DNA of 64,000 nt from Utricularia gibba. Its lineage: Eukaryota; Plantae; Magnoliophyta. Position 1 is the first letter of the stretch. Each line of letters starts with the position of its first letter. The position numbers and the translations under genes are program-made. The notes under the pieces were generated by a model, which saw only the letters and a program-made list of their open reading frames with translations, had not been told where the DNA came from and did no database searches. Location of the stretch: assembly GCA_002189035.1 (NCBI GenBank), contig NEEC01000010.1:2914001-2978000 (forward strand), read 5' to 3'. Shown here piece after piece: positions 46,191 through 57,457 of this stretch.

Positions 46191-46289
46191 ATCCCTTCAA
46201 ACAGTGGCGTCGGTTGAAACTCCGCCCCCTTGAATCGAACGCGCTTTCTACGTGAGATTCGATTTCCGTTAGGTTTTGGGGTATTTGAG

Positions 46290-47168
46290 ATGGCGGCTAG
46301 AAGGGATTCTGATCGGATAAAGGGGCCGTGGAGCCCGGAGGAGGACGATCTTCTGCGGCGGTTGGTGGAGGAGCACGGGGCGAGGTGCTGGTCGGTGATC
46401 AGCAAATGCGTCCCGGGGCGTTCCGGGAAATCCTGCAGGCTCCGGTGGTGTAACCAGCTCTCGCCAGAGGTGGAGCACCGCGCCTTCACGCGGGAGGAGG
46501 ACAAGGCCATCATTCGCGCCCACGCCAAGTTTGGGAACCGGTGGGCGACCATTGCGCGCCTCCTATGTGGGCGTACGGACAACGCTGTCAAGAACCACTG
46601 GAACTCTACTTTGAAGCGCAAGCGTTTCTCAATGTCGGCAGAGGAGTTCAAGACCTTCGATCCGGAGGCTCAGGCGCCGGCGTTGAAAAGATCGGCGAGC
46701 GTGGGGCCACTCACCTCCGCGTTACCTTCGACACCCAGGTTCAACCCGGGTAGCCCGACCGCATCTGACGTCAGCGACACAGGTCATCCGACGTGCAGAC
46801 CAGTTCCTTCATCCGCCGGTGGTTCTCAATCTCCGCCGCCTGAAATCGCGGATCCGTTAACTTCCCTCTCCCTTTCACTCCCTGGAACCGAACCCAACTC
46901 AAAATCCGTACCCGACCCTAACCCAACCTCGTTTCCGCTAAAGCACCCATCAGCAGTCCAATCTGTTCCCAATCAGCTCTTTTCCTCGCCAGGGATCCCC
47001 TCTGAGAAACAGTTTTTCAGCCCGGAGTTCATGTCGGTGATGCAGGAGATGGTAAGGAAGGAAGTGAGGAGTTACATGTCGAGGATTGAGCAAACCGGCT
47101 TCTGCTTTCAGAGTGAGGCCGTTCAAAATGCGGTGATCAAGAGAATGGGAATCAGCCAGATCGATTGA
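46290..47168 (+). CDS. MYB44: R2R3-MYB subgroup 22 (MYB44/MYB73-like), intronless
   Basis: [12 protein letters not shown]...[37 protein letters not shown]-like LSLSL, and subgroup-22 motif [17 protein letters not shown]. Confidence 0.92.
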
Positions 47169-50749: not shown

Positions 50750-52263
50750 ATGGAAATGGTCAGCGCGGTCTGCCTCCTCTCGCTTTTCTTGTTTGTCTGC
50801 GCCTCGGCTTTGGCTCCATTCTGTCGCCGGAGATTCTACGGCTATCCCCCGAGCCCACCCCTCTGTTTTCCGATCATCGGCCATCTCTATCTCTTCAAGA
50901 AACCGCTTCATCGGTCCTTGGCCGCCATCTCACAGAAACACGGCCCCGTGGTGCTGCTTCAAGCCGGATCACGCCGCGTCCTCGTCGTCTCATCACCGAC
51001 AGCGGCGGAAGAATGTTTCAAGGGAAACGACGTCGTATTCGCTAACCGTCCCAGGTTTCTTTCTGGGGAGATCCTGGGGTACGGCTGCTCGACTCTTGTT
51101 TGGGCGCCCTACGGCGAGTATTGGCGCAATCTGAGACGCATAGCTTCTCTTGAGATATTGTCTGCTTTTCGTATCCAGGCGTTTGCCGATGCGCTAGAGA
51201 CGAAGTTCGATCGCTGGTACGGCGGCTGTGTAATCGCGAAGGTGATTCTGATGGATTTGTGGTGGTTGACTTGAAATCTGCGCTGTTTGAACTCACTCTG
51301 AATATTTTGATGATGATGATTGGGGGTAAACGATATTCTGATGAGGGCGGCGACACCGCGAGCTTGGAAGAGAGGCAAAGGTTCAAGGAGATAGTCAGTG
51401 AGACTTTCGCCGTGACCGGCGCCAACAATATGGGGGATTTCTTACCATTTCTCCGGTCTATCGGGATTGACAAAACCCAGATCAGAATGGAGGTTCTCCA
51501 GAGAAAAAGAGACAGCTTGATGCAGGATCTGATCGACGAACACAAAAGATCCCCAAAACCTCGTCAAACTCTGATCTCAGTGCTCCTATTCCTTAAAGAA
51601 TCCGACGGCGACTCCTATTCCGACACATTCATCAAAGGAATGATGCAAACAATGCTCTCCGCAGGAACAGACACATCGGCCCTAACAATGGAATGGGCAA
51701 TATCTCTTCTTCTCAACAATCCCGAAACTCTCACCAAAGCCCAGAACGAAATCGCCGCCGTCACCGGAAATTCACGGCTAATCGCAGACTCGGATCTCCC
51801 CCATCTCCCATATCTCAAAGCAATCATATTAGAGACATTGCGGATGTACCCAGTAGGGCCTCTGCTCGTCCCCCATGAATCCTCAGCCGAATGCTTCGTT
51901 TCAAATCACCGGGTTCCTCGAGGAACAGTTCTTCTAGTGAACGCCTGGGCGATTCAAAACGACCCCCATTTGTGGGACGAGCCACTGAGGTTCAAACCAG
52001 AGAGATTCCTTGGCAACGACGGCGGCACACGCGAAGGCATAATGATGCTGCCGTTTGGGTACGGACGGCGAGGGTGCCCCGGCGAGAATCTGGCAATGCA
52101 CGTCGTTGGATTGACGATAGGAGCTTTGATCCAGTGCTTCGAGTGGCGCAGGGTGGCGGAAGAAATGGTGGACATGACGGAAGCCTCTGGGCTAACAATG
52201 CCTAAGCTGATTCCTCTTGTGGCCAAGTATAGGCCCAGGAAGGAGCTGGCCCAACTACTCTAA
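50750..52263 (+). CDS. CYP81: Cytochrome P450 CYP81 family (CYP81Q32/CYP81D-like), intronless, with one -1 frameshift (pseudogene or assembly error)
   Basis: PPSPP..PIIGHL, FANRP, WRNLRR, I-helix SAGTDTS, ETLR, KPERF and heme motif FGYGRRGCPG. The frame switches at about 51194; one extra base restores ..ADARRDEVRSLVRRL...VDLKS. Confidence 0.88.
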
Positions 52264-53550
52264 ACCCTAAGCCCATTAGCTCATATTATATGTATTTCAA
52301 AATAAAATTGAAAATGGGCTCATAAAAATTGTATAAATCTATGTAAATTAATATTATATTGAATAAATACGTTTAAAAAAGATAAAAAAAACAATAATAA
52401 AATTTTCTTAAAAAATATAATTGTGTAAATTATAAAGCATTTAGAATTACATTTATAAAATAAATAAATATATACAATTGCAGACGTAAATAATTATATC
52501 AAATACCAAGTGGTCGTCCTAATTAATCCCATCATTAGTGCTAACTCCCGTCCGTACGAGGGATTCATATTCCCGCGGGCCCCACTTGTGTGAACTTGAT
52601 TAAGGAGGGGTTGCAATAACGTTACAAATTGCGGTAAAGGTTCACTTTCAACGGGACAAAGAGTTGGGATACCAAACAAGGAAACATTTCCTGAATAGGA
52701 AATCGGCCTGGAGTCAGAAAGCCCAATTACTTGTTTTGGGTATTAGGTAAATATATTTTATATAATTAAAATAGTTTTTTATACATGAATTTTGCATATA
52801 TATGTTTAAAATGATATTATGTTTGATATAAATATAAATATATATATATATAATTTGAAAATTGAATTGTTTAACAAAAATCAACTAGAAGTCGAGTTTT
52901 TAAATATTCAATTCGAAATGTTTTACAATTATTTTATAAAAAATTCTTGTATTAAACTATTATTATATACGTATTTAAATAATAAAACACAAATTTTTTA
53001 TTAATGTGACAAATGTTTCGATCATAAAAATTACTATATTTGCGGTGGTGATGTTCGAATGCCCATTTTCCTAATTTGTAGGATGAGCAATTGCCTAAAA
53101 TCCGGAACGGCGCCGTTTTTCTTTGTGTCCAGACACGCCGAACCTACAATACAAAAAAAAAAGAAAATTATCATTAAATATTTGGGAAAGTGATGTTTAT
53201 GTCCAAAATCGAGGCAAAAATTCCAATTTTCAAACCTCTTCGCCATACTGCCTTCACATCATTTTTTCCATTATTTATTTTATTTTGATTGGTGAAAATT
53301 GTGTTTTAGTGTATGATGGGATAGATAATTATTTTAAAATTATGTAAATCAAATTAATGATTAAATTGGACAATTAATAAGATGTGTTTAAATAATAGTT
53401 TTAATTTTTTAAAATTATTTAAGCCAATTTGAATTAAACGTGTTTTTAAAACTTGGGATAAAAGTATTATTAAAAAAAGGAGAATTTTTTTTGGGAATAT
53501 TATTTTGGAATAATTTTAAAAGGAAGAGGCTACTGCGCTTGAGTATCGCG

Positions 53551-55815
53551 ATGGCGGATATGGAGGAGGAAGCCCTGGAAAATGCAGGGTCGATAAGCAA
53601 TCCCTTTTACACCGCTTGGCCTGATTTTTCGCCGGAAAATGCGACCACTTCGTCCAATAAACTTCGAGATTCCGATCAGGGTCTTCGGTGGGGTTTTTCT
53701 ACGCTCAAACTTTCCGACGATTTTCGATCGGACGCTTCTGCCGCCGCCGCCGCCGCCGCCCATGTTTCCTCTTATTGTCGTACGGATGAACCTTGTCCTT
53801 TGTGGTTGAGTTCTGGGGGATTTGGAACCCTTTTTCCTATCCTCAGCAACAAAGTAGCACCTGCAGCAACAGAAACTGGGCTATTGGGTCGAGTGGCGCC
53901 CACGGAACGGGGGAGGTATTGGGTTTGTGGGGAAGAAGCTCATATATTGATGATGGAGATCACTGCCCTTCACCGTTGCTGGAGTGGAATCAGGGACAAG
54001 GATGTTTAGGAGCCAATTTCGATAATTATGGCAGCTCTCTGTTGCATGGCAGAGAATTTTTGTCAGTGGCCGCCAATAGCCGGTTGCGACTTCCGTCATT
54101 TTCCCCGCAACCGAGCAATTTCTTTTTCTCTTCCGAGTGTGGCACCCAGAAACCGAACCGTTTTGATTTCAACACCATGAGAGGGAAAATAGTCCCATTG
54201 GCCAAAAATCAAGATTGGTGCATCGCGCTGTGCTCGATTTTAGAAAATGGGGTTACCATGGATGAAATCGAAGCAGTACTCCCAGAAATAGTGAACAATT
54301 TGGGTGATCTTATGGAGAACCAGTTCGGGAGTCGATTCATTAAGACCCTTTTCCAGAGGTGCAGTCGGGACCAGAAGACGAGGATCGTTAACGCCGTGAC
54401 CAGATTCCGTTCTGTGTTCCTCCACATATGCCTCAACCAACATGGGTACAAATGAGTTCAAGTTTAACATTTTTGCAGCTTAGATTCTCGTAGCAGTTGT
54501 CCTTTTGCATACATTGACACTTAGTCGGTTTACTCAGGGTTAAAGCAGTGCATAAGATCCTGGAGCTCCTGGATACACCTTTGCAAGTATCTATGATCGT
54601 GGTCGCATTGATCCCTGATGCTTGTGTGTTAGCAACTGATACGAATGGGCAGCATGTTATAGAGTACTGTGTCAAGAACTTCCATAGGAGCCACACTGCG
54701 GTAATAATCTTCTACTCTTTCTGTTTTAACAATGATCAGGGATTGTTAAGGCATTGAACTTGCAGCTCACTGAGCACGAAGGTTGATCACCTTCCATGAG
54801 TAAAGAGCGGCTTTTATTTAACAAGCTGCATATGGGTTTGTAGCAAGGAACTAGATCTGAAGCTTGTGCTTGGCTGTAGGTGTCTCAGTCTAGGAACAAG
54901 TTGGTATCAAGTGTTCTAGTTCTGATGCTTAGCCTGCTGATCGTGTTTCTGCTTATTAAAGACTACAGCTTTACGAATTTCAGGCTTCTGTTTGTTTCTG
55001 AGTTGCTCCTACATGTAGAGGATATAGCCTGAACCTCAGTTTGATGGCATAAGACATGAAGATAGAATTCGATCTCCATATGAACTTTTCATGAAGTTTG
55101 TTCTTGTCTCTGATTCACAGGATCTTATTGCGAAGTTAACATCAGAATGCTTCGAAATTGCAACCAACAGAAGTGGCTGCTGTGTGCTGCAATCCTGCAT
55201 GGAGAACTGTGATGAAACAGCAAGAGACCTCCTGATCAGAGAAATCCTTGCCAATGCACGCAGCCTGGCTGAGGATCCTTACGGGTACTGATGCATACAA
55301 CCTTTTCCTCTCCATTATTTCTGCACTGACTCCTGATTCACTCCCTTCCCAGTAACTACGTAGTTCAGTGCGTGATCGGGCTCAACATTTCGGATGCCAC
55401 AGCTGATCTCCTGAGAGCATTCAAAGGAAGCTTCACAGCACTCTCCCGCAACAAATATGCAAGCAATGTGGTGGAGGCCTTCCTCAAAGCATCAGGTGAA
55501 GCCCCTCGTGCAGAAGTCATCAGGGAGTTACTCGCGAGCCACGATGGCTCCTCCCTCCTCACCGATCCATTCGGAAACTATGTCATCCAGACAGCCCTCC
55601 AGGTATCAAAAGTAAAGAAAGACAATCTGATCACCCCCTCCATTCCATCCCTCGCTTCTGCACTATTCACAGACGCCTTGCATCGCCATCAGGGCCATGA
55701 ATGTAATGCCCTGATGACGATGATCGAACGCCACGCGCCGTCCATGCATCGGAATCTGTACGGCAAGAAGATCCTTGCTTCAGTTGAAAAGATGAAGCAG
55801 ACCAGAGCCGCCTAG
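53551..55815 (+). CDS. Pumilio/PUF RNA-binding protein (APUM7-12-like class)
   Basis: Eight Puf-like repeats from about 54180, including NRSGCCVLQ, DPYGNYVVQ, NKYASNVVE and DPFGNYVIQ, ending YGKKIL; GT-AG exons to TAG 55813-55815. The start is uncertain because of a probable frame break at 53790-54006 (alternative ATG about 54177). Confidence 0.82.
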
Positions 55816-56029
55816 TAACAGATTGGAAGATGCTCTCCCTCTTCCTCTGTCCATAGCTTGGCAGCATATGCCTCCTCACATGTATTTTTAGGTATATTTT
55901 ACTTGTAATTTAAAAAAAATATTTTTTAGAAAATTATTGCAAGGATAATGATTGAGGAGGTAATGGTCAAGAATTTTCTTCCGGAATTATTTTTTTTATT
56001 TTTCTTGGAGGAAAATTGAATTTAGTCAG

Positions 56030-56037
56030 TATAAAAG
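56030..56037 (+). promoter_or_regulatory. Candidate TATA box of the iridoid synthase
   Basis: TATAAAAG about 100 nt upstream of ATG 56132. Confidence 0.5.
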
Positions 56038-56131
56038 AGGAGCTCAGGAACCTCTTCGGACCAGATGCAGGCGACGCTTTCTTCATTCGTAGCTTGTTAG
56101 GTGCTTTCTCTCCACAATGTACACCGATACG

Positions 56132-57457
56132 ATGAGCTGGTGGTACCGCCGGTCGATCGGGGAGATCGAGCCGGCAAGTTATTGACTTGTCTTTGAATAT
56201 TTTATTAAGGTGGAAACAGAAGTTCATCTCTCATTCTCATGATCTTCTTATTCAATTGCGCAGAAAAGGTTGCAGGCGAATGGCACGGTGGCGGAGAAGC
56301 CGGAGAGCGTAGCTTTGATAATCGGCGTGACGGGAATCGCGGGAAGCGGGCTCGCGGAAACATTGTCGTACGCCGGCACTCCTGGCGGCCCGTGGAAGGT
56401 ATACGGCGTGGCGCGCCGCCCCTCCCCCGAATGGCTGGCGACTCTTCGGGTGGAGTATGTTCAGTGTGATATCGCGAATACAGAGGAAACTCAGGCGAAA
56501 CTGGCTCCGTTGACGGACGTTTCACATGTCTTCTACGTCTCGTGGACCGGATCTGAGGACTGCGAACTCAACACCCTGATGTTCCGGAACGTCCTCGACG
56601 CCGTCATCCCGAACGCCGTTAATCTGAAACACGTGGGGTTACAGACCGGAATCAAGTACTACTGGGGAAACATGGCGGAAATGGACAGCACAAATCAGCC
56701 TCACGATTGCCCGTTCTACGAAGATTTACCCAGATTGAAACAGGAAAATTTCTATTACAATCTCGAGGATTTGATCCAATCGGCGACCGCGCGGAAGAAC
56801 ATCGCGTATTCAATTCACCGCCCAGCTCTGATCTTCGGGTTCTCCCCCTGCAGCATGATGAACACGGTGAGCACTCTGTCTGTTTACGCTGCCATCTGCA
56901 AGTACGAAAACAAGCCCCTTGTGTACACCGGCACTGATGTGTCCTGGACGTGTCTGTGGGACGCCGTGGACTCCGATCTCCTCGCGGAGCACTTCATATG
57001 GGCCGCCATGGCCCCCGGCGCCAAAAATCAGGTATTCGTTCGCATCAGAATGACTACTTTCTTTCCACTAAATGTAATTCGTTTCTTTTATTCCCGCTCG
57101 CAGGCTTTCAACGTGAACAACGGCGACGTGTTCAAATGGAAGCACATGTGGAATGTCCTGGCGAAGGAGTTCGATCTGCAGGCGGTGGGCTTCGAGGGGA
57201 AAGAGCCAGTACTCTTGGAGGACCTGATGAAGGACAAGGAGCCGGTTTGGGACGCCATTGTGAAGCAGCATGATCTGGTTCCGACGAAGCTCAGGGACAT
57301 CGCCGCCTTCTGGTTGGCCGACGTGGTGTTCAGAAACAAGGAGACGCTCTGCAGCATGAACAAGAACAAGGAGTTCGGGTTTCTGGGGTTCAGAGACACC
57401 ACAAAATCCTTCGTCAATTCCATCAACAAAATGCGCGCCTTCCGGCTGATTCCCTGA
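56132..57457 (+). CDS. ISY: Iridoid synthase (PRISE family), AmISY-like, predicted C7-(R)/epi-iridoid type, 387 aa
   Basis: join(56132-56173, 56264-57031, 57104-57457) = 1164 nt. MSWWYRRSIGEIEP|KRLQANG, GVTGIAG, GPWKVYGVARR, LQTGIKYYWG, catalytic NFYY, HRPALIFGFSPCSMMN, KNQ|AFNVNNGDVFKWK and C-terminal FRLIP. Confidence 0.93.

What the first reader, a model, noticed from the sequence alone, without database searches (positions are those of the whole stretch)
56132..57457. Iridoid synthase with the residues linked to inverted (7R) stereocontrol
Seen: an intact PRISE gene with ISY-type LQTGIK, the stretch SWTCLWDAVDSD (Trp codon 56957-56959) and AAFWLADVVFRNKET (Leu codon 57314-57316). Established, recalled from memory: Catharanthus CrISY has Ala246 (CYADAVDA) and Phe342 (AFWFADIAF) and gives 7S products, while snapdragon AmISY has Trp and Leu there and gives 7R (epi) products, the entry to aucubin/catalpol/antirrhinoside-type iridoids. 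The stretch YYWGNMAEMDSTNQPH.CPFYE.LPRLKQENFYYNLED also matches my recollection of AmISY. Inference: this is an epi-iridoid synthase, probably from a lineage where the enzyme is uncharacterised.
Basis: partly seen in the sequence, partly recalled or inferred. Interest (0 to 1): 0.72.

Follow-up and report, generated by a model that had tools for sequence, protein, structure and literature searches.

The report
Bladderwort-type epi-iridoid synthase gene
This is an intact plant gene for iridoid synthase, most likely of the mirror-image (7R) type first described in snapdragon; it is a new member of a known enzyme group, not a new kind of enzyme.

Summary
A three-exon PRISE gene lies at 56117-57457 (+). 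By alignment to the solved Catharanthus enzyme, its Trp (56957-56959) and Leu (57314-57316) fall at CrISY positions 246 and 342. All seven pocket positions tabulated by Kries et al. 2017 carry the snapdragon AmISY residues (W149, W246, L342, V345, V346, N349, T352). It also shares 29 of 31 residues that separate the signature-bearing Lamiales proteins from other ISY-clade proteins. A likelihood tree places it inside a 100/100-supported core-Lamiales ISY clade, away from progesterone 5-beta-reductases. dN is low and dS is saturated, so the protein is under purifying selection. The genome is probably a bladderwort (Lentibulariaceae); the scan's notes name Utricularia gibba. No ISY from that family has been assayed. 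Kries et al. predicted that epi-ISYs could be recognised by exactly this signature, so this is a new member of a known kind. Two oddities affect the gene model: intron 1 has a GC donor, and the 72-base in-frame intron 2 is absent from all five relatives examined, so it was probably gained.

The parts
56031..56038 (+). TATA-like box (TATAAAAG) about 80 bases upstream of the start codon
   Evidence: Read directly from the sequence. Its function is not tested.
56117..56173 (+). Exon 1, 19 codons (MYTDTMSWWYRRSIGEIEP).
   Evidence: An in-frame TAG lies at 56090-56092. The same N-terminus occurs in the Paulownia, Centranthera, Phlomoides and Digitalis P5bR2 proteins. tblastn of exon 1 hits the orthologous loci.
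56174..56263 (+). Intron 1, 90 bases, with a GC-AG boundary (GCAAGT ... GCGCAG)
   Evidence: No in-phase GT donor exists before the stop at 56183. The position matches the intron of Paulownia (donor CAC|GTAGGT) and of the Logan contig (CAG|GTACGT). Composition is 33% GC and 40% T. No RNA evidence.
56264..57031 (+). Exon 2, 256 codons. It holds the Rossmann motif GVTGIAGSG (from 56324), K146 (56654-56656), W149 (56663-56665), Y178 (56753-56755) and W246 (56957-56959).
   Evidence: Translation; Pfam PRISE PF22917, 6e-13; alignment to CrISY chains; codon coordinates.
57032..57103 (+). Intron 2, 72 bases, GT...AG, in frame with no stop, specific to this lineage
   Evidence: It is a clean 72-base insertion at CAG|G relative to Paulownia and the Logan contig. 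It is absent from Phlomoides and Striga, and from this site in Andrographis. It is 39% GC and 40% T, and GC3 is 10/24 against 0.756 in the exons (binomial P = 4e-4). Splicing is not shown.
57104..57457 (+). Exon 3, 117 codons plus TGA. It holds L342 (57314-57316), V345 (57323-57325), V346 (57326-57328), N349 (57335-57337) and T352 (57344-57346).
   Evidence: Translation; Pfam PRISE; alignment to CrISY; coordinates; AmISY residues from Kries Table S1.

Best explanation
The gene encodes the ISY-clade PRISE enzyme of a Lamiales plant, probably a bladderwort of the Lentibulariaceae. It belongs with the AmISY-type (epi) iridoid synthases.

Mechanism, from established knowledge of the family: the short-chain reductase binds NADPH in its Rossmann fold. 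With Lys146 and Tyr178 it delivers a hydride to C7 of 8-oxogeranial in a 1,4-reduction, releasing 8-oxocitronellyl enol.

Inferred step: because the substrate pocket is the AmISY one (W149, W246, L342, V345, V346, N349, T352), the hydride should arrive on the opposite face to CrISY and give the 7R enol. A separate iridoid cyclase (ICYC) then closes this to 7R-cis-cis nepetalactol, the entry to 8-epi-deoxyloganic acid and aucubin/catalpol-type iridoids.

Shown here: gene structure, family and clade membership, pocket identity and purifying selection. Inferred: 8-oxogeranial turnover, 7R selectivity, expression and correct splicing.
For: - Pfam PRISE domain on both large exons.
- The best solved relatives are six CrISY sequences (507-511 bits), against 409-428 bits for progesterone 5-beta-reductases.
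- K146, Y178 and the GxxGxxG motif are present.
- All seven pocket positions of Kries Table S1 equal AmISY. The paper predicts that epi-ISYs can be recognised by W149/W246/L342/V345/V346.
- Among the 120 best database relatives, the full five-residue signature occurs only in six core-Lamiales proteins: Paulownia, Centranthera, Phlomoides, Striga, Andrographis and one unnamed Logan contig. Near-complete versions occur in Penstemon, Sesamum and a Phlomoides paralogue.
- The window shares 29 of 31 residues that are fixed in that group and absent from 15 other ISY-clade proteins.
- The tree places it in a 100/100 core-Lamiales ISY clade, beside Gentianales and Olea ISYs and separate from the P5bR1 clade.
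- dN is 0.07-0.16 with dS saturated, on a long terminal branch (0.17 against 0.026 for Paulownia), yet the pocket is unchanged.
- Colinas et al. 2025 show that ISY sets C7 and that ICYC cyclises either enantiomer.
- Aucubin is listed for Utricularia australis in a review that cites Damtoft 1985.
- A scan note reports an ICYC-G8H gene pair elsewhere in this genome (not tested by me).
Against: - No assay exists, and the signature is correlative. CrISY carrying these residues reached only 1-17% R product, so unseen second-shell residues matter.
- None of the signature-bearing proteins I used as the 'epi' group has been assayed, and AmISY itself could not be aligned.
The model needs a rare GC donor and the removal of a 72-base segment that relatives lack.
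- All PRISE enzymes reduce many enones in vitro, so the role in the plant is not proven.
- Whether this particular species accumulates iridoids was not established.
Confidence: 0.75

Rival explanations
1. It is a working iridoid synthase, but it is not 7R-selective. It gives 7S or mixed products despite the AmISY-like pocket.
For: The pocket residues do not suffice for inversion: the best CrISY graft gave 17% R. AmISY itself gives only 61% R from citral. This lineage evolves fast (terminal branch 0.17), so second-shell positions may differ. Two of the 31 clade-diagnostic positions do differ (V185I, T263M).
Against: 7 of 7 pocket positions and 29 of 31 diagnostic positions are kept despite fast evolution. 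The two differences are conservative. The family's reported iridoid, aucubin, is of the epi series.
Confidence: 0.1
2. The gene is decaying or silent. The 72-base segment is not removed and so adds 24 residues inside the fold, or the GC donor of intron 1 fails, or the gene is not transcribed.
For: The 72-base segment is absent from all five relatives examined. Intron 1 lacks a GT donor. No transcript could be examined. The neighbouring P450 shows an apparent frame shift, so gene decay or assembly indels occur nearby.
Against: All three exons are open, with no frame shift. Omega is far below 1. The insert has exact GT...AG ends at a CAG|G site and intron-like composition, with GC3 10/24 against 0.756 (P = 4e-4). 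GCAAGT is the usual form of GC donors (my own knowledge), and it sits exactly where relatives have their GT donor.
Confidence: 0.08
3. It is a general enone reductase, like the stress-induced P5bR2 enzymes, and its role in the plant is unrelated to iridoids.
For: Digitalis 'progesterone 5-beta-reductase 2' lies in the same core-Lamiales clade. PRISE enzymes are widely promiscuous (family knowledge; also the theme of PMC10792066 listed).
Against: Digitalis P5bR2 has lost most of the signature (W V F V A), while the window keeps all of it. A scan note reports cyclase and G8H genes in the same genome. Relatives in the family make aucubin.
Confidence: 0.07

Closest known systems
AmISY, the epi-iridoid synthase of Antirrhinum majus (Kries et al. 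2017, PMC5582856)
   Same: The residues are identical at all seven tabulated pocket positions (149, 246, 342, 345, 346, 349, 352). It falls in the same core-Lamiales ISY clade, judged through Penstemon as the Plantaginaceae stand-in. The predicted reaction is the same: NADPH-dependent 1,4-reduction of 8-oxogeranial to the R-enol.
   Different: It comes from a different family (probably Lentibulariaceae) and has not been assayed. It has a longer branch. Its gene carries a GC-AG first intron and an extra 72-base intron. No direct alignment to AmISY was possible because the sequence was not in any database reached.
CrISY, the Catharanthus roseus iridoid synthase (PDB 5COA, 5DF1 and others)
   Same: It is the best solved relative (about 510 bits). 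It has the same fold family, the same catalytic Lys146/Tyr178 and NADPH motif, and the same substrate class.
   Different: Identity is about 58% as listed, with the read-through segment counted in the query. All seven pocket positions differ (F A F I A S L in CrISY). The loop after residue 149 is one residue longer (GNMAEMDSTNQPH against GIFE-EGSKVVPH). CrISY is strictly 7S.
Unassayed core-Lamiales ISY orthologues (Paulownia fortunei Pfo_021947, Centranthera grandiflora ISY, Phlomoides rotata, Striga hermonthica, Andrographis paniculata)
   Same: Identity is 83% to Paulownia over 372 aligned columns. They carry the same full signature, the same N-terminus and the same first-intron position.
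   Different: None of them has the 72-base second intron. Paulownia and the Logan contig use a GT donor in intron 1. In Paulownia a P5bR-type PRISE gene lies 3 kb upstream; the window has none.
Progesterone 5-beta-reductases (Digitalis P5bR1, PDB 2V6G; Arabidopsis VEP1, 6EL3; 5MLH/5MLR)
   Same: They share the PRISE superfamily, fold and catalytic pair.
   Different: They form a separate clade in the tree, score about 100 bits lower and have different pocket residues.

Membership tests
PRISE (progesterone 5-beta-reductase / iridoid synthase-like enone reductases, SDR superfamily) | PRISE-like Rossmann-fold domain (Pfam PF22917) | tested here: met
   Exon 2 scores 6.3e-13 (49 bits; cut-off 27). 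Exon 3 scores 4.9e-05 (23 bits), which is below the cut-off on its own because it is only the C-terminal third.
PRISE (progesterone 5-beta-reductase / iridoid synthase-like enone reductases, SDR superfamily) | NADPH-binding GxxGxxG motif and the catalytic Lys146/Tyr178 pair | tested here: met
   GVTGIAGSG starts at 56324. K146 is at 56654-56656 and Y178 at 56753-56755. All are aligned to CrISY.
Asterid iridoid synthase clade (CrISY/OeISY type) | Phylogenetic placement inside the ISY clade and outside the P5bR1 clade | tested here: met
   IQ-TREE, 41 proteins. The ISY clade is supported at 100/99 and the core-Lamiales subclade holding the window at 100/100. P5bR1 sequences lie elsewhere.
Epi-iridoid synthase (AmISY type, 7R) | Published signature residues W149, W246, L342, V345, V346 (plus N349 and T352 of Table S1) | tested here: met
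   The window reads W W L V V N T, 7 of 7.
Epi-iridoid synthase (AmISY type, 7R) | Shares the residues that separate signature-bearing Lamiales ISYs from other ISY-clade proteins | tested here: met
   29 of 31 diagnostic columns agree. The exceptions are V185I and T263M. The reference group was defined by the signature, not by assay.
Epi-iridoid synthase (AmISY type, 7R) | Direct orthology to, or alignment with, AmISY itself | tested here: inconclusive
   AmISY did not appear among 1530 hits. Its accession field in the paper reads 'Am.18679'. Only its tabulated residues and the Penstemon stand-in were available.
Epi-iridoid synthase (AmISY type, 7R) | Reduction of 8-oxogeranial to the 7R enol (R-citronellal from geranial) | not testable with these tools
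   This needs recombinant enzyme and chiral GC-MS.
Epi-iridoid synthase (AmISY type, 7R) | Expressed and correctly spliced in a plant that makes epi-iridoids | not testable with these tools
The only support is from the literature (aucubin in Utricularia australis) and from a scan note of ICYC-G8H in the same genome.

The most novel reading that the evidence does not exclude
The 72-base in-frame GT...AG segment (57032-57103) is a spliceosomal intron gained recently, at a CAG|G proto-splice site, in a lineage best known for shedding DNA and shrinking introns. Together with the T-to-C change that turned the conserved intron-1 donor into GC, this would make the gene a clean, datable case of intron gain in a minimal plant genome. 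Separately, the fast-evolving but pocket-perfect protein, set beside its relatives, narrows the search for the still unknown second-shell determinants of 7R selectivity to about 31 positions.
Probability: 0.6. Interest if true: 0.4.

Novelty: new member of a known kind. Interest (0 to 1): 0.3.

Why it matters
Iridoids split into two mutually exclusive stereochemical series, and ISY sets that choice at C7. In the papers searched here, only one 7R enzyme (AmISY) has been assayed, and its selectivity could not be transplanted into CrISY.

This gene comes from a third, fast-evolving family and still keeps the whole pocket. That supports the published recognition rule. It also offers a divergent natural sequence for finding which other residues are truly required.

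It further indicates that a plant with a very small genome has kept the entry step of the aucubin/catalpol route. None of this would surprise a specialist: Lentibulariaceae are reported to contain such iridoids, and the signature was proposed for exactly this kind of identification.

Tried and rejected
Expression and both splice junctions remain unverified.
- AmISY sequence: it did not appear in the word search. 5MLH/5MLR turned out to be labelled progesterone 5-beta-reductases scoring about 409 bits, not AmISY. Kries et al. used a homology model, not a crystal structure.
- Searches used exon 2 and exon 3 by reference, or the read-through reference window:56264-57454 (its 24 extra residues fall in gap columns that the tree trimmed). 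Nothing was searched or folded with the joined 392-aa protein.
- Other donors for intron 1: the only GT donors before the stop at 56183 are out of phase. One alternative (56151|GT joined to 56269) would delete the conserved SIG...KR stretch. Rejected.
- Source of the 72-base insert: blastn-short found no other copy and no flanking duplication in the window. The rest of the genome was not available to me.
- Second PRISE copy in the window: none found by tblastn.
- Neighbouring P450 as an iridoid-cluster partner: it is CYP81Q32-like, not CYP76 or CYP72. The same CYP81-PRISE neighbourhood appears in Paulownia, and, judging by locus tags, in Tetracentron and Jatropha. It is therefore old synteny rather than a pathway cluster. 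Rejected.
- Structure prediction, the big representative search and the third word search: not run. Family and clade were already clear, and a model would not settle stereochemistry.

Full report
**What is there.** The window holds one PRISE gene on the + strand.
- Exon 1 runs from 56117 to 56173, intron 1 from 56174 to 56263, and exon 2 from 56264 to 57031 (256 codons).
- Intron 2 runs from 57032 to 57103, and exon 3 from 57104 to 57457 (117 codons and TGA).
An ATG five codons upstream (56117) follows an in-frame TAG at 56090. It gives the N-terminus MYTDTMSWWY, which the Paulownia, Centranthera, Phlomoides and Digitalis P5bR2 proteins also have. The product is therefore probably 392 aa, not 387.
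- A TATAAAAG box lies at 56031-56038.

Exons were searched apart by reference, or the read-through reference window:56264-57454 was used, which is possible because intron 2 is in frame.

**Check of the observation.**
- In the phmmer alignment to CrISY crystal chains, chain number plus 23 gives CrISY numbering. TCLW aligns to NCYA, so W falls at 246. FWLADVVF aligns to FWFADIAF, so L falls at 342.
- Kries et al. 2017 confirm the recalled biochemistry.
- Their Table S1 lists seven pocket positions, and AmISY reads W149, W246, L342, V345, V346, N349, T352. The window has the same residue at all seven.
- The paper states that epi-synthases should be recognisable by W149, W246, L342, V345 and V346.

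**Family and clade.**
- Pfam finds the PRISE domain on both large exons.
- The best solved relatives are CrISY entries at 507-511 bits. Progesterone 5-beta-reductases score 409-428 bits.
- The word search found 1530 relatives. The best are from core Lamiales: Paulownia fortunei (78% with the read-through segment counted, 83% over aligned columns), then Centranthera ISY, Phlomoides, Striga, Andrographis and Penstemon. The CrISY and OeISY sequences are at 58%. No identical protein is in the database.
- In a 41-protein IQ-TREE analysis the window lies in a 100/100 clade of core-Lamiales ISY-type proteins. That clade sits next to the Gentianales and Olea ISYs within a 100/99 ISY clade, far from the P5bR1 group.

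**How specific the signature is.**
- Among the 120 best relatives, the complete W-W-L-V-V set occurs only in six core-Lamiales proteins and the window.
- Penstemon (W W L V I), Sesamum (W W M I V) and a Phlomoides paralogue (W M L V V) come close.
- Digitalis P5bR2 (W V F V A), Primulina, Castilleja and Buddleja members of the same clade have lost it.
- I listed the columns where at least six of seven signature-bearing proteins agree on a residue that none of 15 other ISY-clade proteins has. There are 31 such columns, and the window agrees at 29.
- These columns include a one-residue insertion and several changes in the loop after residue 149, and Y245L next to W246.
- The reference group was defined by sequence, not by assay.

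**Selection.** Against Paulownia, Phlomoides and the Logan contig, dN is 0.07-0.16 while dS is above 2.6 or too saturated to compute. The terminal branch is long (0.17 against 0.026 for Paulownia), yet the pocket is untouched. This is what a maintained enzyme looks like.

**Gene-model oddities.**
- *Intron 1.* It sits exactly where Paulownia and a Logan genomic contig have their intron. Those use GT donors (CAC|GTAGGT and CAG|GTACGT), while the window has CCG|GCAAGT, a GC-AG intron. No in-phase GT donor exists before the stop at 56183.
- *Intron 2, position.* It is a clean 72-base insertion between CAG and G relative to Paulownia and the Logan contig. It is also absent from Phlomoides, from Striga and from the P5bR-type paralogue of Paulownia. 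Andrographis is uninterrupted at this site and instead has a break of about 860 bases some 30 codons further on.
- *Intron 2, composition.* The segment begins GT and ends AG. It is 39% GC and 40% T, like intron 1, against 54-61% GC in the exons. In the reading frame its GC3 is 10/24 against 0.756 in the exons (P = 4e-4).
- *Reading.* It is most likely an intron gained in this lineage. An unspliced 24-residue insertion cannot be excluded without RNA.

**Organism and context.**
- The window is gene-dense, with very short introns.
- Genes seen, in order: GT8, WEMBL, F-box/LRR, R2R3-MYB, a P450, a Pumilio-repeat gene directly upstream of ISY, and a subtilase downstream on the other strand.
- The P450 is CYP81Q32-like. 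Its highest identity (68%) is to Genlisea aurea, a member of the Lentibulariaceae.
- Earlier notes of this scan name the genome as the bladderwort Utricularia gibba. One note reports an iridoid cyclase-G8H gene pair on another piece of the same genome. I could not test either note beyond the Genlisea hit.
- A review lists aucubin for Utricularia australis, citing Damtoft 1985.
- In Scrophularia nodosa, ISY, G8O and ICYC are clustered. Here ISY has no pathway neighbour within the window.

[quoted passage not shown] With AmISY the product is 7R-cis-cis nepetalactol. The window's enzyme is expected to act like AmISY.

The main caveat is that the signature marks the epi type without explaining it. 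CrISY with A246W/F342L gave 1% R product. Adding I345V/A346V gave 17%. AmISY gives 89% from geranial.

**Verdict.** This is the predicted outcome of a published recognition rule applied to one more Lamiales family, so it is a new member of a known kind and of modest interest. The GC donor and the probable intron gain are the less expected details.

Noticed in passing
window 57032-57103: A 72-base in-frame GT...AG segment is absent from the orthologues of Paulownia, Phlomoides and Striga, from a Logan contig, and from this site in Andrographis. Its composition is intron-like. It is probably a lineage-specific intron gain at a CAG|G site.
   Followed up: partly
window 56174-56263: The first intron has a GC donor (GCAAGT) at the exact position where Paulownia and the Logan contig have GT donors.
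   Followed up: partly
window 50750-52263: A CYP81Q32-like P450 lies 4 kb upstream of ISY, with best identity (68%) to Genlisea aurea. The two halves of the protein match in different frames, with only 5 bases for 2 residues near 51190-51196. This is either an assembly indel or a frame-shifted pseudogene. The rest of the coding region is uninterrupted.
   Followed up: partly
window 50750-57457; Paulownia contig CM033119.1: The CYP81Q32-like and PRISE genes appear linked in distant plants. Locus tags on the same contigs are Paulownia Pfo_021957/Pfo_021947, Tetracentron HHK36_002674/002684/002686 and Jatropha JCGZ_16064/16056. This suggests old conserved synteny rather than an iridoid cluster. 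It is inferred from tags and contig lengths only.
   Followed up: no
L001:5438-6831 and L001:10001-11424: Paulownia has a P5bR-type PRISE gene 3 kb upstream of its ISY-type gene, as a tandem pair of the two clades. The window has a Pumilio-repeat gene there instead.
   Followed up: no
L004:8772-9985: The Andrographis orthologue is interrupted by about 860 bases after roughly codon 30 of the region matching window exon 3. This is a different site from the window's intron 2. It may be an intron or an insertion.
   Followed up: no
L002:327-1594, L003:48-1315: Logan contigs from runs SRR30420915 and SRR30416193 come from an unnamed plant. They carry a full-signature ISY with an 89-base first intron of similar size, and with an acceptor (CGCGCAG|AAAAAG) like the window's. 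In the tree this protein groups with the window and Andrographis.
   Followed up: no
window 46230-47168: An R2R3-MYB gene lies 9 kb upstream of ISY, on the same strand. No link to the pathway was examined.
   Followed up: no
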